Assembly (NCBI GenBank): GCA_965240325.2
Contig: OZ251223.1
Location: forward strand, 4,487,644 to 4,551,643
Direction of reading: 5' to 3'
DNA length: 64,000 nt
Origin: Rebecca billardiae RCC1528
Taxonomy: Eukaryota > Protista > Haptophyta
Shown here one piece after another: positions 45,830 to 58,678 of this stretch. The notes below the pieces were generated by a model, which had not been told where the DNA came from, did no database searches, and worked only from the letters and a program-made list of their open reading frames with translations. A program made the translations under genes and the position numbers. Position 1 is the stretch's first letter. The number at the start of each line of letters is the position of its first letter.

Positions 45830-47079
45830 AAGCGCACGCGCACGCAGGGCGGCGGCGCGCCCGCGTGCGGCGCCCCCTCGCCCTCCTCCTCCTCCTCCTC
45901 CGCGCCGCGCGTCGCGACGAGCTCCGCGTGCACGGCCAGCGCCTCGCCGTGCGGCAGGAGCGGCGGCGGCCCGTCGTGCAGCAGCGCGCGCGCCGCGGCG
46001 GCCGCCTCCGCCTCCGACCACGGCGCGGCCTCCGCGCCGCCGCCGCCGGCGTGCAGCGCGCGCGCGAGCGGCGGCAGCGCGCGCAGCGCGGGCAGCACCG
46101 CCGCGGGCTGCAGCGTCATCGCGAGCAGCGCGTCCAGCGTGCCGTGCTCGAGCGGCTGCATGAAGGCGCCGTCCAGCGCCTCCCACAGGCAGGACAGCGC
46201 GGCGAGGTCGTCTGCGTCCGCGCACCCGCCGCCCGCGGAGACGCGCGCGCCGCCCGACGCGGCGGGCGTCTCGCTCGAGCAGTCGGACTCGTACCCGGCG
46301 GACGAGTCGTCGTCCTCGTCGTCCTCCTCCTCCGACTCCTCCTCAGCCTCCTCCTGCGAGTCGCGCGAGCCCGCCGCCTCGCGCCGTCTGTGCGGCGGCA
46401 GCGGCAGCAGATCGGCCGAGTCGTCAGAGCGCTCCGACGCGGCCGCGGCGCGCGCGTCCGCGCGCACGTGCGCCGCGGCCGCGCGCGCCGCCTTGCGCTG
46501 GCGCTTCTTGCGTGGCCGCTCGTCGCTGCTGCCGTCGGCGCCCGCGGCCGAGCTGCCCGCGCGGCCCCGCCGCGCGCCCGTCGGCACCGGCGCCACGCGC
46601 CGCCGTTGTCCTCGCGCGGGGGGCGGCGCGCGGCCAGCGCCCGGCGCGCGCGCGGGCAGCCGCTGCGCGAGCCGCACGCACGCGGCGCACGGGCACACGC
46701 CGTCGCACACCGGGCAGTCCCACGCGTCGGGCACGGCGCACACGGCCTCGGCGTCCTGCGCGGTGCTCGAGCTCACGCACACCTCGCAGAACGGGTGGGT
46801 GGGCGCGCCGTGCCGCACGCCGCACGCCACCCAGCGCAGGCCCGCGCGCGGGTGCTTGCACCGGTGGCAGTTGGGCACCACGTCGTGCCAGCCGGCGCAG
46901 CCGCGGCTGATCGGGCCGCCGCCGCCGCGCGCCTTGCCGCCGCCGCCCTTCGCGCCCGCCGCCGCCGCCACGCCCTCCGCCGCCTCGAGCGCGCGCTGCG
47001 CGGCGTGCGGCGCGCGCTGCAGGCCTGCGGGCGGCCGCACGATCACGACCGCGTACGCGCACGCGCCGCGCCGCGCGCT

Positions 47080-47115
<36 letters not shown>

Positions 47116-47703
47116 GGGGGGCGGCGCGAGGGGCCGCGCCCCCGCGCGCGCCGCGCCGCCGCCGCCGCCGCCGCCCTTGTGCTTCTTCGGCGGCGGCGGC
47201 CGGGCGGGGCCGCACAGCGTGCGCGGCGGCCGCACGATCACGCGCAGCAGCGGGCTGCTGGCGGGCGGCGCGGGCGGCGAGGCGGGCGGCGGCGCGGCGG
47301 CGTTCGCCACCGCCGACGCCGCGCGCGCCGCGCGCGCGCGCGAGCCGCCGACGCCGCTCGGCGCGGCGGGCGTCTCGGCCGCGCCGGCGGGCGCGGGCGC
47401 GGGCGCCGACGCGCGCCGCGAGCGCCGCGCGGACATGCGGCAGTCGGTGCACGGGCCGAGGCGGCACTTGGGGCAGCCGCCGAGCTCGTCCGGCTTGGGC
47501 GTCGCGCAGAGCAGCGACGCCGCGCCGCCCACGCTCGCCAGCTGGCCGGTCGGCACGGGCGTGAGCACGTGCAGCCGCACGCGCGCGGGCGGCGTCGGCG
47601 CGGGCACGCGCGCGGGCGAGCGCGCGGCGGCGCCGGGCGCGGCCAGATCGGCGGCGCCCGCAACATCCGCCGCCGCGCGGCGCGGGTGGCGCATCGGGGC
47701 CAT
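44394..47703 (-). CDS. chromatin protein with zf-4CXXC_R1-type zinc finger, PHD finger and acidic tail; introns 44962-45074 and 44775-44875
   Basis: CHRC..C..FCEVC..WDCPVCDGVCPCAAC; spliced PHD CAACADGGLLLCCDG|CTAAFHAQC...WYCDLC. Confidence 0.75.
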
Positions 47704-47954
47704 CGCCGCGCTCCGAGCCCGCGCGCGCGCGCCGAGGCGGGCGCGCTCAAACGAGGGGCGGCTGGGGCGACCAGTGGCGCTTCCCCTTGGCTCCGCACGC
47801 GCGCCGCCCGCCGGCCGCCTTGGCATTTGAGTTGGGCTCTGGCACGATGGCGCCCGGCGTTCGAGCGCTCCCGGCGTCCGGGCTGGGGCCTGGCAGGGCG
47901 GTGGGGGCGCGCGCGCCTCTCCCGGACGCACGCGCGCCACCTGCGCTCTCGCCC

Positions 47955-49184
47955 ATGGTGCACGCGGCGAAGCGCCCGCGCCACGCGCTGCGGCTGGACA
48001 AGGCGCTCGAGGGCGTGCGCGCGGCGCGCGTGGTGGGCTCGCTCGTCGCGTCGAGCGCGGCGATCGGCACGCACGACGGCACCTTCCACTGCGACGAGGC
48101 GCTCGCGTGCGCGATGCTCAAGCTGCTGCCCGCGTTTGCCGAGCACGCGGTCGTGCGCACGCGCGACGAGGCGGTGCTCGCGCAGTGCGAGCCCGTGGTC
48201 GACGTGGGCGGCGTGTATGACCCGTCGGCGCAGCGGTACGACCACCACCAGCGCGGCTTCACGCACACGCTCGACGAGCTCGGCTTTGGCACGAAGCTGT
48301 CGTCGGCGGGGCTGGTGTGGCGGCACCACGGCAAGGAGGTGCTGCGCGCGATCGGCAGCACGCTCGACGCGCCGCCGGAGGACGCGGCCATCGACGTGCT
48401 GTACAAGAAGGTGTACAAGGATTTCGTCGAGCACATCGACGGCATCGACAACGGCATCGAGGCCGCCGACGGCGCGCCCAACTACGCGGTGACGACGACG
48501 CTCTCCCGGCGCGTCGGCCGTCTGAACGCGCCGTGGAACGAGAGCGCCTCGGCCGAGGAGGTGAACGCGCTCTTCAAGCACGCGATGGAGCTCACGGTGC
48601 GCGCGCGCACCGCGCGCCCGCCCGCGCGCGCGCGCGCGCCCGCGTCGTCCGAGCGCGCCCCTGCGTGCGCCTGCTCCGTGCGGCTGTGCGTGCGGCGGTG
48701 CGCGCTGCAGGGCGTGGAGCTGGGCGAGTGCGTGCTCGGGCTGCTGGCCGAGTGGTGGCCCGCGCGCCAGCTCGTCGTGCAGGCGCTCGACGAGGCGGAG
48801 GCGCGCGCCGCCGCGTCGGGCGCGGCGGCGGACGAGGCGTCCATCGTCGTCCTGCCGCACTTCTGCCCGTGGCCCGCGCACCTGCTCGAGCTCGAGGCCG
48901 AGCGCGGGTGCGTGGGGCGCAGCGTGTACGTCCTCTTCCAGGACTCCAAGGGCGGCTGGCGCGTGCAGGCGGTGCCGCAGGCGGAGGGCTCGTTCAGCTC
49001 GAGGCTGCCGCTGCCGGAGCCGTGGCGCGGCGTGCGCGGCGCGCAGCTCTCCAAGCTGCTCGGCCTCGAGGGCTGCGTCTTCGTCCACGCCGCCGGCTTC
49101 ATCGGCGGGCACGAGACCAAGGAGGGCGCGCTCACGATGGCGCGCGCCGCGCTCGCGCACGCACGCGATGCGCGCCAGCAGTAG
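47955..49184 (+). CDS. MYG1: MYG1 exonuclease (UPF0160); intron 48597-48710
   Basis: IGTHDGTFHCDEALA, VDVGG, YDHHQ, KLSSAGL, IDGIDNG, PLPEPWRG, FVHAAGFIGG. Confidence 0.92.
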   Translation: MVHAAKRPRHALRLDKALEGVRAARVVGSLVASSAAIGTHDGTFHCDEALACAMLKLLPAFAEHAVVRTRDEAVLAQCEPVVDVGGVYDPSAQRYDHHQRGFTHTLDELGFGTKLSSAGLVWRHHGKEVLRAIGSTLDAPPEDAAIDVLYKKVYKDFVEHIDGIDNGIEAADGAPNYAVTTTLSRRVGRLNAPWNESASAEEVNALFKHAMELTVRARTARPPARARAPASSERAPACACSVRLCVRRCALQGVELGECVLGLLAEWWPARQLVVQALDEAEARAAASGAAADEASIVVLPHFCPWPAHLLELEAERGCVGRSVYVLFQDSKGGWRVQAVPQAEGSFSSRLPLPEPWRGVRGAQLSKLLGLEGCVFVHAAGFIGGHETKEGALTMARAALAHARDARQQ

Positions 49185-49912: not shown

Positions 49913-51492
49913 TCAGGCGATGTGCGTGCCCTTGAGCGTGTCGCCCTCGTTGAGCGTCTCCGTCGGCACGTGCTTGAGCAGCTTGAGCTTCTCGAGGATC
50001 GCGAACGTGTTGGGCGACTGGTTGAGCGTGTAGAAGTGCAGGCCTGCGCGGGGAGGCGCCGCGGCGGCGCGCGGCGCGTCAGCGGCCGCTCGGCGCGGGC
50101 TGCACGGCGGCGCGCGCCGCGCGCCGCGCGCCGCGCACCGTCGACGAGCCCCGACGCGAGGAGCTTGGCGCACAGGTCGGCGACGTACTGCAGGCCCATC
50201 GCCTTGAAGCCCTCGGCGTCGTCCTTGAGCGCGTCGCACTTCGCCTTGAGCTCGTCGGGCACGCGGCTCTTGCAGAAGGCGGTCATGCGCGAGAAGCCGC
50301 CCGCGTTGGCGATCAGCATCATGCCGGGCAGGATGGGCGCCTTGATGCCGCGCGCGCGCACGGCGTGGACGAAGGCCTCGAACACCTCGAAGTCGAAGAA
50401 CATCTGCGTGATGATCGCGTCGCCGCCCGCGTCGATCTTCGCCTTGAGGTAGTCGAGCTCGCGCTCAAAGTCCGCGTCGGAGCAGACGAACTGCTTGCCG
50501 TCGACCGTGACGAGCCGCTTCTTCTCCGCCTCAGACAGCGGCCGGCCGAGCGCCTCGACCGGCTTGATCACGTCCGGGTGGCCCTCGGGGTAGCCCGAGA
50601 CCTGGATGCCGAACCAGTCGCCGAAGCCGGCGCGGATGTACTTGACCAGGTCGAGCGCGCACTCGAAGCCGCCCTCGACCGCCTCCCACTTCTCCTGCCC
50701 CTTGGGCGGGTCGCCGCGCAGCGCCACAATGTTGCGGATGCCGTGCCGCTTCGCCTCGCGCAGCGCCTCGCCGCACAGCGCGGGCGCCTGGTTGGTGCAC
50801 GTGAGGTGCATGTTGATGTCGAGGCCGAAGCGGCGGTACGCCTCGACGCACAGGTCCATCGTGAGCTGGCTCGTGCTGCCGCCCGCGCCCCACGTGAAGT
50901 CGAAGAAGAGCGGCTGCTGCTTGGCCATCACGTCGAGCGTCTTGTACAGCGTCTCCACGCCCGCGGCCGTCTTGGGCGGGAAGTACTCGAAGGAGACGTA
51001 GGGCTCGCCCGGGTGCTGCTTCGCCCAGACGGCGAGCTTGTCCGAGATCTTCTCGCACTTGTGCAGCACCGGCTCCGTCAGCTCGGACGGCGCGAAGAAG
51101 GCGCTCGCCTCCGCGCGCGCGGCGGCCGCGTCCGCGGCCGGCTCGACGACCGCCGACGACGCCGCCGAGCCGAGGTCGCCGCGGAGCGTGCCGGGCGCGC
51201 ACTCGAGCGGGGCGGTCGAGGCACCGGCCATCGAGAGCGCCGCGCGCACCGCGCCCTCGCCCATCACGACGAGCGACACCGCCGCGCCCGCGATGAGCGC
51301 GCTGACGCGCGCGTCGTTGTCCGCGTCGGCCGCGCCGTACCGCTCGGCCGCCTGCGGCTTGGTCACGTGGACCATCTTGAGGCCGATCACGGCGAAGCCG
51401 CGGCGCTCGAAGCGGCCGACCACCTCGGCCACCTGGCCGCGCGCCACCACGTCGGGCAGCACCAGGATCGTCGTGAACTCGTCCGCCGGCAT
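49913..51492 (-). CDS. MTHFR: methylenetetrahydrofolate reductase with an N-terminal degenerate NDP-kinase domain; intron 50044-50138
   Basis: MTHFR motifs SFEYFPPKT, TWGAGG, MHLTC, ALRGDPP, GYPEGHP, ITQMFFD, G|LHFYTLN. The N-terminal part (TTILVLPDVVARGQVAEVVGRFERRGF...APGTLRGD...SAFF) is NDK-like. Confidence 0.9.
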
Positions 51493-51762
51493 CGTCGTCG
51501 CTGTGCGTGCGTGGGGATGAGATGCGCGTCCAACCGAATTGCACGGCGACGGCAAGCAAAGCCGGGCGTGGGATTTCGCGTAGATTCTTTCCGCGCGGCC
51601 ACGCGGCCGCGGGGCAGTGCCGCTGAGCAGCGGCGGTGCCGCTCGCAAGCCGCAAGTCCGTGCCGAACGGTCGCCCGGCCCGGACTCGCGCCCCCTCGCC
51701 CCTCGGCGTGCGCGCTGAACGGGCGCAGCGGCAGCGCGGGCCGACGACAAAGCGCGAGCAGC

Positions 51763-52750
51763 ATGGGCGTCAGCGCCGTCGCGGCGGCTCTCGTGGCGTG
51801 CGCGGGCGTGGCGTCGCCGCCGCAGCGGCTGGCGCTGCCGCGCGCGGCGGCGCCCAGCCGCGCGCGCCCCGCGATGGTCTCCGCCGGCGCGGCCTCCAAC
51901 GTTGACGGCGCGCGCATCGGCCCGCCGCCCGACCTGCCCTCGCTGCTGCTGCACAACCGCATCGTGTACGTCGGCACCGGCCTCGTGCCGCAGGTGACCG
52001 AGCTGATCGTCGCGCAGCTGCTCTACCTGCAGGCACGCGCGCCCCGCCGCGCGCCTCGCCGCCGCGTCGACCGCCGCCGGCCGGCCGCGGCCGCGCGCGC
52101 GGCGGCTCCTCACGCGCGCGCGCCGCGCGCCGCGGCCGCGCGCGCGCGCCCGGCGCGCGCGCAGTTCGAGTCTGCGGAGAAGCACTACTTCATGTACATC
52201 AACTCGCCGGGCACCGCCTCGCGCGACGGCATGTCCGGCTTCGAGACCGACGCCTTCGCCATCGCCGACACCATGCGGTACATCAAGCCCGAGGCGCACA
52301 CCGTCTGCCTGGGCATGGCGTACGGCACGGCGGCGATGCTGCTGGCGACCGGCGCCAAGGGCAAGCGCGCGTGCCTGCCCAACTCGGTGATCATGCTGCA
52401 CCAGCCGCGCTCGCGCACGCAGGGGCAGGCGTCGGACATCGCGCTGCGCGCCAAGGAGGTGCTGTACAACCGGCGCGTGCTCGCGCAGATGCTCTCCGAG
52501 CGCAGCAGCCGCGACGTGGAGCGCGTGCTCGCAGACATGGGCCGCACCAAGTACCTGAGCGCAGCGCAGTGCGTCGAGTACGGCATCGTCGACAAGGTGC
52601 TCGAGACGACGCAGGTGCGGGCGGACGGCGCCGCGCGGGGCGGGCGGCCGGGCGGCGCGGCGTGCCGACGCGCGCCACCCCGCCCCCGCCCCCTTCCGCG
52701 CGCGCGCGCAGGAGCTGCCGGCAGTGCCCACCTTCCTCGACAAGCTCTGA
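51763..52750 (+). CDS. clpR: plastid Clp protease non-catalytic subunit (ClpR-type); introns 52033-52164 (GC-AG) and 52615-52711
   Basis: PPPDLPSLLLHNRIVYVG, IVAQLLYLQ, MYINSPG with ClpR-type insertion. GMAYGTA lacks the catalytic Ser. Signal/transit leader ending RARPAM. Confidence 0.88.
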
Positions 52751-55860: not shown

Positions 55861-57592
55861 TCACTCCGCGTCGGAGCCGCCGCCGTCCTCCGCCGGCTGC
55901 GGCTCCGGCTCTGCGTCCGGGGCGGCAGCAGGCGGAGCAGAGTGAGAGGGCGTGGAGTTGTACCCGATCAGCTCGCGCGCGGGCCCGGCGGCCACGAGCT
56001 GGTGCCGCGCCTCGCGCGCGCTCGCCTCGGCCTCGTTCGCCGCGCGGCGCGTGAGCGTGAGCGCGCTCGGCCGCAGCTCGTTCAGCCCCGAGGCCGCGCG
56101 CTCTGCGAGCGAGCGCCTGGTGAGCTCGAGCCTGCCGCTCACCTCGTTGTACAGCGCAGCAGCGGAGCCCCCGCCCCCGTCCTCGGGGCCCCCGCCCTCG
56201 GGCGCGGAGAGGACGAGCAGGTAGGTGGAGCCGTCGAGCGGCTTGAGCTCGTGCGCGTACTCGCGCACCCACTCGAGCGGCCGCGGCGCGCCCTCCGCGC
56301 CGCCGCCCGCGCGCGGCACCATGTAGGCCACGATGCCGCCGCCCGCGCCGCCGTCGGCCGCGGGCAGAGCGTACCCCTGCGGCCGGGCGGCAGGGCGGCG
56401 CGCACACCCACCACGCGCGCGGCGCGGCGCGGCGCGTGAGGGCGGCGCGGCGGGCGGGCACGCGGCGCGGCGGGGCCGCGCGCGCGCACCTTGGCGAACG
56501 CGCGCGCCACGTCGGCGGGCGGCTTGCCCGGCGCGTCGAGCCCGTCGGCGGGGTCCCCGTCGAAGCGCACGTGCGTGTACGCGTTGGGCCAGCAGCGCGC
56601 GTCTGGCAGCACGGGCATCACGCTCAGCGGGCGCAGCTCGGGGTGCAGCGGGTGCGTGGGGCCGGCGCCGTCGCACTCGCGCGACACCGCCTCGAACGAG
56701 GCGTCGATCGCGTCGATCCGCGCGGCGAGCGTCGGCTTGGTCAGCTCGGCGAGCGCGCCGCCCGCCGCCGCCGCCTCGGCCGAGCTGCGCGCGCGCGCGC
56801 GCGCGCGCGGCGCGCGGCGGCGCGCGTGAGCGCGGCGCGGCGGCGCGCGCGGCGCGCGTGAGCGCGCGCGCACCTCTGCTGCTGCAGCGCCGGGTGCACC
56901 CCGCGCTGCTGCGTGTCGTACAGGTTGTTCCCCAGGTACACGTGCCGCCGCAGCCACGGCACGTGCAGCTCGCCCAGCGCGCTGCGGCCGCGCGTCGGCC
57001 CGCCGCCCTTGGGCGCCGCGCCCGCCGGCTTGTCGTCCAGACCGCCGATCGGCGCGAGCAGCGCGGCGTCGGCGGGCGCGAGGTGCGCGGTGGACGCCGC
57101 GCGCTCGTCCGCCGCGCCCGGCTCGTTGCGCAGCTCGGGCCTCGGCGCGAACGCGTGCGGCAGCACGAGGTCGGCCGCCACGCCCAGGTCGGGCTCGGGC
57201 AGCACCTCCCACGCGTGCGACGCCTCGAGCGAGGTGGCAAAGTCGTACGCGGAGAGGCGCTCGGCGTCGGCGGGGGCGCGCAGCAGCTTGAGCTCGGCCG
57301 GCGGCGGCGGCAGCGCGTTGGCGAACGGCATCGGGCACAGGAAGTCGGAGCGCGGCCGCGTGGCCGAGCCGTCGGCGGACGAGCGCGCGGGCACCGTCTC
57401 CGACGACGACGCGCCCGGCCGGCGCGCGCCGCCGCCGCCGCCGCCGCCGGAGGCGGAGGGGCGCGGCGCGGCGGACGGGCGCGGCGGCGCCTCCTCGCGC
57501 GGCCGCTTGCCGCCCGGCGGCGGCGGCGGCGGCGGCGCGCCGCGCGCCGCCGCGGCGGACGCGGACGCGGCGGCGGCGGCGGCGGCGGCGGC

Positions 57593-57623
<31 letters not shown>

Positions 57624-57736
57624 AGCGCGGTCGGCGGCGGCGCGCCCGGCGGCGGCGGCGGCGCGCCCGGCGGCGGCGGCGCGGACTGCGGCGGCCGTGG
57701 CGGCGGCGGCGGCGGCGGCAGCGCCGTCGACGACAT
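55861..57736 (-). CDS. PAF1: RNA polymerase II-associated factor 1 with Pro-rich N-terminus; introns 56785-56873 and 56377-56489
   Basis: FLCPMPFANALPPPP, TSLE, DLGVAADL, VPWLRRHVYL, IDASFE..HPLHPELRPLSVMPVLPD, WVREY. Confidence 0.8.
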
Positions 57737-57934
57737 GCCGCCGCGCGCTCCTCGGGGGGGGGGCTCGGCGCGCGCTCGCGGCGATCGAGCTCGGCGGTCG
57801 GCACGAGGGCCGCCCCTGCTTGGGGTCAGCACACACGCAGCCTACCAACAGTACAAGAGAGCAGGGTTTCGTCGGCCCCGTACTGTATATCGTCGTCTTG
57901 ATCCCGAGCGACGGGCGGCGCGCGCGCGGGCGCC

Positions 57935-58678
57935 ATGCCCAAGGCCGCCGCCGCGCCGGAGCCGCCGGCCGCGCCGCGCGCGGCGACGATCCACGACCTC
58001 GTCGCCAACCCCTTCTACGTCGACGAGGCGTCGGCGAGCGAGAGCGAGCGCGCGGCGGGCGCGCGCGACCAGTGGGCGCGCGAGCTGTACGAGCACAACC
58101 TGCGCGAGCTCACGCGCATGATGAACGGCGGCCGCGCGATGTGGTGCGTGCGGCTGAACGCGGTCGGCGCGATCGAGGAGTCCCGGCGCTGCCGAGCGTC
58201 CGACCGCGCCGGGCGCGACTGCTTCACCCTCTTCATCCCGGGGCAGGGCGGCACGCCGCGCTTCGGCCACCCGAACAACCTCAACCCGTCGCAGATGAAC
58301 GTGTACCCGATCATGAAGGCGGACGCGCTCACGATCGCCACGGCGCAGGAGCGCGCGCACACCGCGCAGCGCGACGGGCTGCTCACGCCCGAGGCCGCCG
58401 AGGCCACGCTCGCCGAGCTGCGCGGCCGCTTCGACGCGCTGCCGCCGTCCAAGTCGGCGCTCGACGAGGCCGCGCAGCGCGAGGCGGCGGCCGCCGCCGC
58501 GGCCGAGCGCGAGCGCGAGCGGCGCGAGCTGCAGGCCGCGGACGACGAGATGCCCTCGTTCGAGGGGCTCGTCGCCGCCTTCCGCGACGAGGACGCGGGC
58601 GGCGCGGCCGCCGGCGCCGCGCCGGCGGCCGCGGGCGGCCGCGCCAAGGCGAGGCGGCGCGGGCGCAGGCGCAAGTAA
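57935..58678 (+). CDS. hypothetical protein
   Basis: Clean ATG..TAA frame with strong GC3 bias and a globular-looking core. Divergent from PAF1. Family not recognised. Confidence 0.7.
   Translation: MPKAAAAPEPPAAPRAATIHDLVANPFYVDEASASESERAAGARDQWARELYEHNLRELTRMMNGGRAMWCVRLNAVGAIEESRRCRASDRAGRDCFTLFIPGQGGTPRFGHPNNLNPSQMNVYPIMKADALTIATAQERAHTAQRDGLLTPEAAEATLAELRGRFDALPPSKSALDEAAQREAAAAAAAERERERRELQAADDEMPSFEGLVAAFRDEDAGGAAAGAAPAAAGGRAKARRRGRRRK

What the first reader, a model, noticed from the sequence alone, without database searches (positions are those of the whole stretch)
49913..51492. MTHFR lacking its SAM-binding regulatory domain but fused to a catalytically dead NDP-kinase fold
Seen: one exon encodes ~130 aa of NDK-like sequence running straight into the MTHFR barrel, and the protein ends ~30 aa after HFYTLN. 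Known: typical eukaryotic MTHFRs have a large C-terminal SAM-binding domain; NDKs need the KPD Lys and the phospho-His of NxxHGSD. Here KPD reads LPD and the His region reads AVVEPAAD. Inference: a pseudo-NDK acting as an alternative ligand sensor (nucleotide or CoA) or oligomerisation module, possibly linking nucleotide status to methyl-group flux in an alga.
Basis: partly seen in the sequence, partly recalled or inferred. Interest (0 to 1): 0.8.

Follow-up and report, generated by a model that had tools for sequence, protein, structure and literature searches.

The report
Dead NDP-kinase domain fused to MTHFR
A haptophyte alga makes its folate enzyme MTHFR as one protein with an inactive nucleoside-diphosphate-kinase domain at the front; the same kind of inactive domain is also found attached to two tRNA synthetases, so it looks like a reusable add-on whose job is not yet known.

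Summary
On the minus strand, 51492..49913, two exons separated by a 95-nt GT..AG intron encode a 494-aa protein. Residues 6-137 match Pfam NDK (E 1.7e-19) and fold like solved NDKs (TM 0.89). The rest is a complete eukaryote-type MTHFR barrel that stops 35 residues after HFYTLN. No SAM-binding regulatory domain is encoded.

The NDK part cannot be a kinase. The phospho-His is Glu117, and Lys12, Phe60, Arg88, Asn115 and Ser120 are lost.

The fusion is real and conserved. It occurs in Diacronema lutheri, Pavlovales sp. CCMP2436, a third Pavlovales-like transcript, and a prymnesiophyte-nested group from marine metatranscriptomes. Every copy has Glu at the His position. Relatives' transcripts carry both domains in one ORF.

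Many protists, including unfused haptophyte orthologues, have MTHFR without the regulatory domain, so that absence is ordinary. The nucleotide pocket is too degraded to make a nucleotide or CoA sensor likely.

New here: the domain belongs to a well-supported clade (97/93) of His-to-Glu NDK-like modules. The members whose full sequence I could read are N-terminal appendages of MTHFR, HisRS or MetRS. A non-catalytic assembly role is my best guess, and it is inference. I found no publication describing the fusion.

The parts
50139..51492 (-). Exon 1: start codon, whole NDK-like domain, linker and MTHFR barrel up to the first base of codon 452
   Evidence: One open frame from the ATG at 51492. It aligns without gaps to the orthologue P0001. 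Pfam finds NDK and MTHFR in this one piece.
51082..51477 (-). NDK-like pseudoenzyme domain (aa 6-137)
   Evidence: PF00334 at 70.5 bits, E 1.7e-19. Best PDB sequence hit is an NDK at E 6.5e-20. The AF2 model has pLDDT 93.3 and matches human NME4 1ehw with TM 0.89, rmsd 1.8 A. It scores 74 bits against NCBIfam NDK equivalog models whose cutoff is 155.
51142..51144 (-). Codon GAG = Glu117, at the position of the catalytic phospho-histidine of NDKs
   Evidence: Alignments to Dictyostelium and ancestral NDKs and to 115 His-bearing NDKs. All MTHFR fusions have Glu here.
51457..51459 (-). Codon CTG = Leu12, replacing the KPD lysine of NDKs
   Evidence: The residue is Leu or Met in the four Pavlovales-type fusions and Lys or Arg in the prymnesiophyte-type fusions.
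51013..51081 (-). Linker and N-terminal helix of the MTHFR domain (aa 138-160), with no in-frame Met
   Evidence: Met residues lie at 1, 40, 77, 88 and then 189, after the catalytic Glu169. A functional barrel can therefore only be translated as the fusion. This stretch is homologous to the N-terminus of unfused prymnesiophyte MTHFRs.
50139..51012 (-). MTHFR catalytic TIM barrel, exon-1 part (aa 161-452)
   Evidence: PF02219 at E 1.9e-85. Best NCBIfam model is TIGR00677 fadh2_euk. Full-length orthologues pass its equivalog cutoff at 321-328 bits against 310. The orthologue model matches solved MTHFRs with TMt 0.94. Glu169, Asp261 and Gln363 are present.
50476..50571 (-). Insertion of about 32 aa after GYPEGHPD (aa 308-339), typical of the short protist MTHFR clade
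   Evidence: It splits the match to solved MTHFRs into two stretches. It is present in the consensus of 48 short MTHFRs. It is modelled with pLDDT 96-98 in the orthologue.
50044..50138 (-). Intron, 95 nt, GT..AG, phase 1
   Evidence: Splicing joins VDG to LHFYTLN, exactly as in the intron-less transcript L001 of the closest relative.
49913..50043 (-). Exon 2: last barrel strand (HFYTLN), C-terminal helix, conserved tail EGDTLKGTHIA and TGA stop
   Evidence: The tail and the stop position are conserved in P0001 and P0003, and in slightly altered form in P0296.
51874..52620 (+). Divergently transcribed ClpP gene (two exons, roughly 51874-52032 and 52165-52620)
   Evidence: PF00574 at E 1.2e-43. 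D. lutheri has the same head-to-head ClpP / NDK-MTHFR pair in L006.
47787..49184 (+). Convergent MYG1-family gene, which bounds the 3' side of the MTHFR gene
   Evidence: PF03690 at E 2e-112. Minus-strand ORFs between it and the stop codon have no Pfam hit.

Best explanation
The window encodes a 494-aa cytosolic-type protein of a Pavlovales haptophyte with two domains.

The C-terminal domain is a complete eukaryote-type MTHFR barrel. It most likely carries out the normal NAD(P)H-dependent reduction of 5,10-methylene-THF to 5-methyl-THF. It has no SAM-binding regulatory domain, so it should not be feedback-inhibited by SAM. This is the ordinary state of a large clade of short protist MTHFRs.

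The N-terminal domain has the NDK fold but is not a kinase, and probably not a canonical nucleotide binder. It belongs to a distinct clade of NDK-like modules in which the phospho-His is Glu. The members whose full sequence could be read are N-terminal appendages of other enzymes: MTHFR, HisRS and MetRS.

My best guess for its role is a non-catalytic assembly module, for homo-oligomerisation or for docking to other proteins that carry the module.

Shown here: gene structure, both domain identities, the dead active site, conservation of the fusion, and the module clade. Inferred: enzyme activity, lack of SAM control, and the assembly role.
For: - Gene model and domains.
- NDK fold of the window's own domain: pLDDT 93.3, TM 0.89 to 1ehw.
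- Barrel fold of the orthologue. The catalytic Glu aligns with the residue mutated in 8uy1.
- Orthologues pass the TIGR00677 cutoff.
- The same architecture is found in D. lutheri P0003, Pavlovales sp. CCMP2436 P0296, P0001, and group B (P0012, P0013, P0015, P0271, P0281).
- Transcript contigs hold one ORF with both domains and a stop after the barrel. L003 and L005 have an in-frame stop upstream of the ATG.
- Both domains lie in one exon in three genomes.
- Glu at the His position in all fusions, with Phe60, Arg88 and Ser120 gone.
- The His-to-Glu modules form one clade against 20 His-bearing NDKs, with support 97/93. That clade also holds the HisRS- and MetRS-borne modules.
- The core and the alpha1/beta2 region (RFE.RG...K) stay conserved while pocket residues vary.
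- The two-domain model has pTM 0.80.
- dN/dS of the NDK part is below 1: 0.52, against 0.30 for the barrel.
Against: - There is no direct evidence of oligomerisation or docking.
- The Kpn loop, which forms the trimer contact in hexameric NDKs, is modelled at low confidence in the full-length model. It is 4 residues shorter in two group-B proteins.
- The C-terminal extension that stabilises NDK hexamers is replaced by the linker.
- Orthologues in E. huxleyi, Chrysotila, Calcidiscus and Haptolina lack the module, so it is dispensable for the enzyme as such.
- Tyr52, Arg104 and Asp106 are retained, and could equally serve a non-canonical ligand site.
- GC3 of 0.99 makes the dN/dS estimate unreliable.
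- Whether the aaRS fusions occur in the same organisms as the MTHFR fusion was not established.
Confidence: 0.55

Rival explanations
1. The pseudo-NDK is an allosteric ligand sensor for a nucleotide, CoA or another adenosine-containing metabolite. It replaces the missing SAM-binding domain and tunes methyl-group flux.
For: The fold is intact and confidently modelled. Tyr52, Arg104 and Asp106 are retained in most fusions. The aaRS-borne members of the clade also keep Lys12, Asn115, Ser120 and Glu129. The domain has been conserved across Pavlovales and a prymnesiophyte group.
Against: The base-stacking Phe60 and the phosphate ligand Arg88 are lost in every fusion. Thr94 is lost in all but the window protein. 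Group B deletes the helix-hairpin segment outright. Lys12 and Asn115 are lost in the Pavlovales group. The surviving residues differ between groups A and B, so no common pocket is conserved. CoA uses the same pocket in NME1 (title and abstract of PMC10253429). Unfused orthologues also lack any regulatory domain, so no replacement is needed.
Confidence: 0.2
2. The module is a decaying relic of an old fusion to an active NDK. It is kept only because the start codon and folding of the N-terminus depend on it, and it contributes no function of its own.
For: It evolves about three times faster than the barrel at non-synonymous sites (dN 0.34 against 0.12). It is absent from many prymnesiophyte orthologues. 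Its active-site residues are eroded irregularly.
Against: It has been retained as a full-length, well-folding domain in four Pavlovales-type and at least five prymnesiophyte-type sequences, with no frameshift or truncation. The His-to-Glu state is shared with modules on HisRS and MetRS. That points to a selected, reusable non-kinase form rather than independent decay.
Confidence: 0.15
3. The module is still a phosphotransferase and uses Glu (Asp in one relative) as an acyl-phosphate acceptor in place of His.
For: The carboxylate is strictly conserved at the His position: 15 Glu and 1 Asp in the clade. Acyl-phosphate intermediates exist in other enzyme families (general knowledge).
Against: Several phosphate and ribose ligands are missing: Lys12, Arg88 and Asn115 in the window protein, and Thr94 in the other fusions. 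NDK equivalog models are missed by a wide margin, 74 against 155 bits.
Confidence: 0.03
4. The fusion is an artefact: two adjacent genes, a mis-assembly, or a transcript that starts downstream of the NDK part.
For: None was found. There is no transcript evidence for the window organism itself.
Against: Both domains lie in one uninterrupted exon in the window, in D. lutheri and in CCMP2436. Independent transcript contigs of relatives carry the whole ORF. No in-frame Met lies between residue 88 and residue 189, which is beyond the catalytic Glu169.
Confidence: 0.02

Closest known systems
Short eukaryote-type MTHFRs of protists (for example E. huxleyi P0047, Chrysotila carterae P0026, Monosiga brevicollis P0108, Cafeteria P0120)
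   Same: The barrel is the same, at 55-62% identity. All match TIGR00677. They share the ~32-aa insertion after GYPEGHPD and end shortly after HFY(T/A/C)LN with no regulatory domain.
   Different: They start at the linker helix and carry no NDK-like domain. No NDK-like sequence lies within 6 kb of the E. huxleyi gene.
Canonical eukaryotic MTHFR (human 6fcx/8qa4, Chaetomium thermophilum 8uy1/8uy2, yeast Met12/13)
   Same: The catalytic barrel is homologous (E 1e-53 to 1e-68, about 40% identity). The catalytic Glu, Asp and Gln are kept.
   Different: Those enzymes have a C-terminal domain of about 300 aa that binds AdoMet and mediates allosteric inhibition (PMC8040968). From my own knowledge of the 6fcx paper, that domain also forms the dimer. 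Here it is absent, and an NDK-fold domain sits at the N-terminus instead.
Nucleoside diphosphate kinases (NME1-4, Dictyostelium NDK, bacterial Ndk)
   Same: The fold is the same (TM 0.85-0.89), identity is 30-40%, and the PGT.RGD Kpn-loop motif is kept.
   Different: The phospho-His is replaced by Glu. Lys12, Phe60, Arg88, Asn115 and Ser120 are lost. There is no free C-terminal extension. NDK equivalog cutoffs are missed.
Group II NME proteins and NME10/XRP2 of animals (NDK-like domains fused to Dpy-30, thioredoxin or TBCC domains)
   Same: These set the precedent for degenerate, kinase-inactive NDK domains used as parts of multidomain proteins. NME10 lacks the catalytic histidine and NME5 lacks three crucial residues (PMC2777172).
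   Different: The partners are different (cilia and tubulin-related), and the NDK part is often C-terminal or repeated. No relationship to the His-to-Glu clade was tested. None is fused to a metabolic oxidoreductase or an aaRS.
Appended assembly domains of eukaryotic aminoacyl-tRNA synthetases (for example the GST-like domain of MetRS in the multi-synthetase complex)
   Same: Both are non-catalytic N-terminal domains derived from enzyme folds and shared among several enzymes. In the aaRS case they drive complex assembly (abstract of PMC8216282; introduction of PMC13215547).
   Different: The fold is different. Assembly by the NDK-like module is only a hypothesis here.

Membership tests
MTHFR, eukaryote-type catalytic domain (PF02219 / TIGR00677) | Sequence match above the curated cutoffs | tested here: met
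   PF02219 scores 287 bits against a cutoff of 24. For TIGR00677, the exon-1 piece, which lacks the last 43 aa, scores 297.8 against 310. Full-length orthologues score 320.7-327.8, above the cutoff.
MTHFR, eukaryote-type catalytic domain (PF02219 / TIGR00677) | FAD-binding TIM-barrel fold of solved MTHFRs | tested here: met
   The model of orthologue P0001 (77% identical, pLDDT 88) matches 8uy1, 3apy and 6fcx at E 1e-27 to 1e-30, with TMt up to 0.94.
MTHFR, eukaryote-type catalytic domain (PF02219 / TIGR00677) | Catalytic residues: the Glu of SFE(F/Y)FPP, the Asp of ALRGD and the Gln of ITQ (E. coli Glu28, Asp120, Gln183, from established knowledge) | tested here: met
   Glu169, Asp261 and Gln363 are present. 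Glu169 aligns with the Gln of the E-to-Q mutant 8uy1.
MTHFR, eukaryote-type catalytic domain (PF02219 / TIGR00677) | NAD(P)H-dependent methylene-THF reductase activity | not testable with these tools
   This needs an enzyme assay or complementation of a metF/met13 mutant.
Canonical SAM-regulated eukaryotic MTHFR | C-terminal AdoMet-binding regulatory domain of about 300 aa | tested here: not met
   The stop codon falls 35 aa after HFYTLN. The stop and tail are the same in four species and in transcript L001, which has a 278-nt 3' UTR. Downstream minus-strand ORFs have no Pfam hit, and a convergent MYG1 gene begins 730 bp away.
Nucleoside diphosphate kinase (PF00334, EC 2.7.4.6) | Homology and fold | tested here: met
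   PF00334 scores 70.5 bits against a cutoff of 27. Foldseek gives TM 0.89 to NME4.
Nucleoside diphosphate kinase (PF00334, EC 2.7.4.6) | Catalytic phospho-histidine in NxxH(G/A)SD | tested here: not met
   The window has Glu117, in the motif AVVEPAAD.
Nucleoside diphosphate kinase (PF00334, EC 2.7.4.6) | Nucleotide ligands Lys12, Tyr52, Phe60, Arg88, Thr94, Arg105, Asn115 | tested here: not met
   At these positions the window reads L, Y, D, L, T, R, A. Only Tyr52, Thr94 and Arg105 are retained. NCBIfam NDK equivalogs score 74 against 155 bits.
His-to-Glu NDK-like appended modules (clade defined here) | Glu or Asp at the His position, loss of Phe60, N-terminal position on another enzyme, and clade membership | tested here: met
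   All 16 members carry E or D, and none of 115 other full-length NDK domains does. The clade has support 97/93. Partners are MTHFR, HisRS and MetRS.
Animal group II NME / NME10 pseudo-NDK proteins | Orthology to NME5-10 and their partner domains (Dpy-30, thioredoxin, TBCC) | not tested
   No partner domain of that kind is present. No phylogeny with NME5-10 was made. The resemblance is functional only.

The most novel reading that the evidence does not exclude
The His-to-Glu NDK-like module is a shared docking domain. By homo- or hetero-oligomerising in the way NDK subunits do, it would bring together the enzymes that carry it (MTHFR, MetRS, HisRS) into one complex in marine algae. That would physically couple methyl-group and methionine supply to aminoacylation, as an analogue of the GST-like domains of the multi-synthetase complex. 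The Pavlovales MTHFR module is sister to the MetRS-borne module (95/87).
Probability: 0.12. Interest if true: 0.8.

Novelty: new variant of a known kind. Interest (0 to 1): 0.5.

Why it matters
MTHFR is the committed step that sends one-carbon units to methionine and SAM. How protists control it without the SAM-binding domain is not known. Haptophytes run very large methionine-derived fluxes, for example to DMSP (general knowledge).

A conserved, catalytically dead NDK domain on this enzyme is a clean natural example of a pseudoenzyme domain recruited as an accessory module, and the same module sits on two aminoacyl-tRNA synthetases. If it proves to be an assembly or regulatory device, it would add a new appended-domain type to both one-carbon metabolism and aaRS biology.

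If it proves inert, the finding is still a useful annotation correction. These proteins are currently named 'hypothetical protein', 'NDK-like domain-containing' or 'nucleoside-diphosphate kinase' in databases.

Tried and rejected
- A region-limited protein search with the window's NDK part found only the four closest fusions.
- The same scan with the aaRS-type modules returned 80 loci. All were ordinary His-bearing NDKs, by their sources (soil, freshwater) probably bacterial, so no new partners were found.
- I could not name the organism of group B, or of the HisRS and MetRS fusions, from cluster members or contig neighbours. Group B can only be placed inside the prymnesiophyte MTHFR clade.
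- Single versus double origin of the MTHFR fusion is unresolved. Holding groups A and B as one clade is not rejected (p-AU 0.56), but the free tree puts group A next to the MetRS module.
- dN/dS is of little value because GC3 is 0.99, and the YN00 method failed.
- Eight literature searches found no description of an MTHFR-NDK or aaRS-NDK fusion. The Leishmania short-MTHFR paper I recalled was not in the searchable library.
- The spliced 494-aa protein has no reference form. Exon 1 (451 aa) and the full-length orthologue P0001 were used for searches and for the two-domain model.
- The model's coordinates and PAE are not returned, so the inter-domain interface could not be examined.
- I rejected three ideas: hidden regulatory-domain exons, a second NDK-like sequence in the window, and an unannotated NDK exon upstream of the E. 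huxleyi gene.
Full report
**Observation.** The minus strand between 51492 and 49913 holds a two-exon gene.
- Exon 1 runs from the ATG at 51492 to 50139.
- A 95-nt GT..AG intron (50138..50044) follows.
- Exon 2 (50043..49913) ends in TGA. Splicing joins ...LVDG to LHFYTLN... and gives 494 aa.
- Exon 1 alone contains a Pfam NDK match (aa 6-137, 70.5 bits, cutoff 27, E 1.7e-19) and a Pfam MTHFR match (aa 161-448, E 1.9e-85).
- The best NCBIfam model is the eukaryotic MTHFR equivalog TIGR00677.
LPD replaces KPD (Leu12). AVVEPAAD replaces NxxHGSD (Glu117). The protein ends 35 residues after HFYTLN.

**Is the gene model right?**
- Both domains lie in one uninterrupted exon here. The same is true in Diacronema lutheri (L006) and in Pavlovales sp. 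CCMP2436 (L007), where exon 1 covers aa 1-165 of a gene with at least 11 exons.
- Transcript-like contigs of relatives carry the whole fusion as one ORF with a stop after the barrel: L001 for P0001 (77% identical) and L002-L005 for P0012. L001 has a 278-nt 3' UTR. L003 and L005 have an in-frame stop just upstream of the ATG.
- The window protein has no in-frame Met between residue 88 and residue 189, and residue 189 lies beyond the catalytic Glu169. A working barrel can therefore only be made as the fusion.
- Downstream, a convergent MYG1 gene (47787-49184, +) begins about 730 bp from the stop. The minus-strand ORFs in between have no Pfam hit.
- The C-terminal tail EGDTLKGTHIA and the stop position are conserved in P0001 and D. 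lutheri, and in slightly altered form (EGDTLKGTFISA) in CCMP2436. No regulatory domain is encoded.
- Upstream, a ClpP gene is transcribed divergently. D. lutheri has the same gene pair.

The window's 65-83% GC and the 69-77% identity to Pavlovales proteins place it in a Pavlovales haptophyte other than D. lutheri, whose genome is 73.25% GC (PMC8379373).

**The MTHFR part.**
- It is a complete eukaryote-type barrel. Full-length orthologues exceed the TIGR00677 equivalog cutoff, at 321-328 against 310 bits.
- The AF2 model of P0001 (pLDDT 88.3, pTM 0.80) superposes on Chaetomium, human, yeast, Thermus and E. coli MTHFR, with E down to 1e-30 and TMt up to 0.94.
- The catalytic Glu of SFEYFPP aligns with the residue mutated in entry 8uy1. 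The Asp of ALRGD and the Gln of IITQ are kept.
- A ~32-aa insertion after GYPEGHPD (aa 308-339) is absent from solved MTHFRs. It is part of the consensus of the short protist MTHFRs.

Lack of the SAM-binding domain is not a peculiarity of this gene. The protein search returned well over 100 MTHFRs of 330-400 aa that end soon after HFY.LN. They come from prymnesiophytes (E. huxleyi, Chrysotila, Calcidiscus, Haptolina), chlorophytes, Rhizaria, Cafeteria, Chrysophaeum and Monosiga.

**The NDK part.**
- It is a true homologue with the NDK fold. PDB sequence hits reach E 6.5e-20. The AF2 model of the window's own domain has pLDDT 93.3 and matches human NME4 with TM 0.89 and rmsd 1.8 A.
- It cannot be a kinase. 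At the ten canonical NDK active-site positions (K12, Y52, F60, R88, T94, R105, N115, H118, S120, E129; the list is from established knowledge), the window reads L, Y, D, L, T, R, A, E, A, E.
- It misses the NCBIfam NDK equivalog cutoffs by half, at 74 against 155 bits.

**Distribution of the fusion.** There are two groups.
- Group A: the window, P0001, D. lutheri P0003 (with its intron-retaining transcripts P0009 and P0282), and Pavlovales sp. CCMP2436 P0296.
- Group B: P0012, P0013, P0015, P0271 and P0281, plus fragments P0289-P0294. These come from marine metatranscriptomes and metagenomes.

In an MTHFR-domain tree, all haptophyte sequences form one clade (SH-aLRT 99). Group A is sister to the prymnesiophytes, and group B is nested among them.

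Every fusion has Glu at the His position and Ala at Ser120. Every fusion lacks Phe60 and Arg88. Group B keeps Lys12 (Arg in one member) but deletes six residues of the base-binding hairpin.

Unfused prymnesiophyte orthologues start at the linker motif that follows the module in group B. The E. huxleyi locus has no NDK-like sequence within 6 kb. The module has therefore been lost, or was never gained, in several lineages. Whether groups A and B descend from one fusion event is unresolved (p-AU 0.56 for one clade).

**A wider family.** An exhaustive search with the window's NDK part gave mostly ordinary NDKs at 30-44% identity.
- Among the 150 best hits plus the fusions, the carboxylate substitution occurs in only 16 sequences: 15 Glu and 1 Asp.
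- These 16 form one clade, with SH-aLRT 91 in the large tree and 97/93 in a careful tree against 20 His-bearing NDKs.
- Besides the MTHFR fusions, the clade holds P0256/P0284. This is the module joined by a Lys-rich linker to a complete HisRS of 647 aa. It lies on intron-less genes in Tara Oceans scaffolds of 64% GC, next to LHC and IFT81 genes.
- P0262 and P0175 are fragments of the same architecture.
- P0295 is the module joined to MetRS, 729 aa.
- P0253, P0148 and P0170 have C-terminal parts of unknown nature, and P0254 (127 aa) is a short near-copy of P0262.
- The aaRS-borne modules keep Lys12, Asn115, Ser120 and Glu129 but also lack Phe60 and, in most, Arg88 and Thr94.
- The Pavlovales MTHFR module is sister to the MetRS module, with support 95/87.

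The dead NDK of this gene is therefore not a one-off decay product. It is a member of a recurrent, non-kinase, N-terminally appended module.

**Mechanism.**
- Shown: the protein is a two-domain fusion whose barrel has all the sequence and fold hallmarks of an active MTHFR. Its N-terminal domain has an intact NDK fold and a dismantled active site.
- Inferred: the barrel does the normal reaction and is not inhibited by SAM, because AdoMet acts through the C-terminal domain that is missing here (PMC8040968).

For the module, I favour a non-catalytic assembly role (oligomerisation or docking), for four reasons:
1. The pocket residues are lost, and lost differently in the two groups, while the core and the alpha1/beta2 region stay conserved.
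2. The one thing the partner enzymes (MTHFR, HisRS, MetRS) share is not a ligand but the benefit of being assembled.
3. NDKs are obligate oligomers (general knowledge).
4. From my own knowledge of the 6fcx structure, canonical MTHFR dimerises through the very domain that is missing here.

Against this: there is no direct evidence. The Kpn loop is poorly modelled in the full-length model and shortened in two group-B proteins. The hexamer-stabilising C-terminus is gone. Unfused orthologues do without the module.

Rival readings are a ligand sensor (0.2), an inert relic (0.15), a carboxylate-based phosphotransferase (0.03) and an artefact (0.02).

**Comparison with what is known.**
- Pseudo-NDK domains inside multidomain proteins are known from animal NME5, NME8, NME9 and NME10/XRP2. 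These lack kinase activity, and NME10 lacks the catalytic histidine (PMC2777172).
- MTHFRs without a regulatory domain are known from bacteria (solved structures). Here they are shown to be common in protists.
- Appended non-catalytic domains that assemble aaRS complexes are well known (PMC8216282; PMC13215547).

What I did not find in eight literature searches is any description of an MTHFR-NDK fusion, or of NDK-like modules on aaRSs. In databases the proteins carry only automatic names.

**Verdict.** This is a real, conserved and apparently unpublished domain architecture. I class it as a new variant of known kinds. It is moderately interesting in itself, and more so because of the module family. 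The module's function remains open.

Noticed in passing
P0256/P0284 (loci L008:1014-2957, L009:8001-9944, L010:4235-6178); fragments P0262, P0175: A complete histidyl-tRNA synthetase carries the same His-to-Glu NDK-like module at its N-terminus, joined by a Lys-rich linker. It lies on intron-less genes in Tara Oceans scaffolds of 64% GC, next to LHC and IFT81 genes. The host was not identified.
   Followed up: partly
P0295 (L011:940-3129, L012:945-3134): A methionyl-tRNA synthetase (729 aa) carries the His-to-Glu NDK-like module at its N-terminus. In the careful tree, this module is sister to the Pavlovales MTHFR modules (95/87).
   Followed up: partly
P0002 (Chattonella subsalsa), P0004-P0008, P0010, P0011: Proteins of 625-723 aa contain two complete short MTHFR barrels in tandem.
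   Followed up: partly
P0049 (Haptolina brevifila transcript, 655 aa): An MTHFR barrel is followed by S-adenosylhomocysteine hydrolase in one ORF. This is either a genuine methyl-cycle fusion or a transcript-assembly chimera.
   Followed up: no
P0081 (459 aa): A short MTHFR has an N-terminal EF-hand region. Other haptophyte MTHFRs (P0016, P0035, P0025) have unrelated N-terminal extensions, so the N-terminus of this enzyme is a hotspot for add-ons.
   Followed up: no
window 50476-50571 (-), aa 308-339: A ~32-aa insertion after GYPEGHPD is shared by the short protist MTHFR clade and absent from all solved MTHFRs. It is modelled with very high confidence as a small helix/hairpin element. Its function is unknown.
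   Followed up: partly
window 49916-49948 (-), last 11 residues: The C-terminal tail EGDTLKGTHIA is conserved in the Pavlovales-type fusions (as EGDTLKGTFISA in CCMP2436). It is absent from prymnesiophyte fusions and from unfused MTHFRs, and it is modelled with low confidence.
   Followed up: no
window 51493-51873 and L006:5920-6000: The head-to-head ClpP / NDK-MTHFR gene pair is conserved between the window and D. lutheri. The two start codons are 381 bp apart in the window and about 81 bp apart in D. lutheri.
   Followed up: partly
window 49913-51492 and the whole window: Composition is extreme. GC3 of the gene is 0.99, and 2-kb windows reach 82-83% GC at 1-2000, 46001-48000 and 56001-58000. 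This produces very long spurious ORFs in all frames.
   Followed up: no
P0009 / P0282 (D. lutheri): These transcript-derived proteins retain an intron inside the barrel and read out of frame at the 3' end. They are mis-spliced or unspliced forms of the D. lutheri fusion gene.
   Followed up: no
P0122, P0123, P0134, P0155, P0195 (1400-1500 aa); P0166: Very long proteins contain 3-7 NDK repeats, some with Tyr at the His position. P0166 is an NDK-GGDEF fusion.
   Followed up: no
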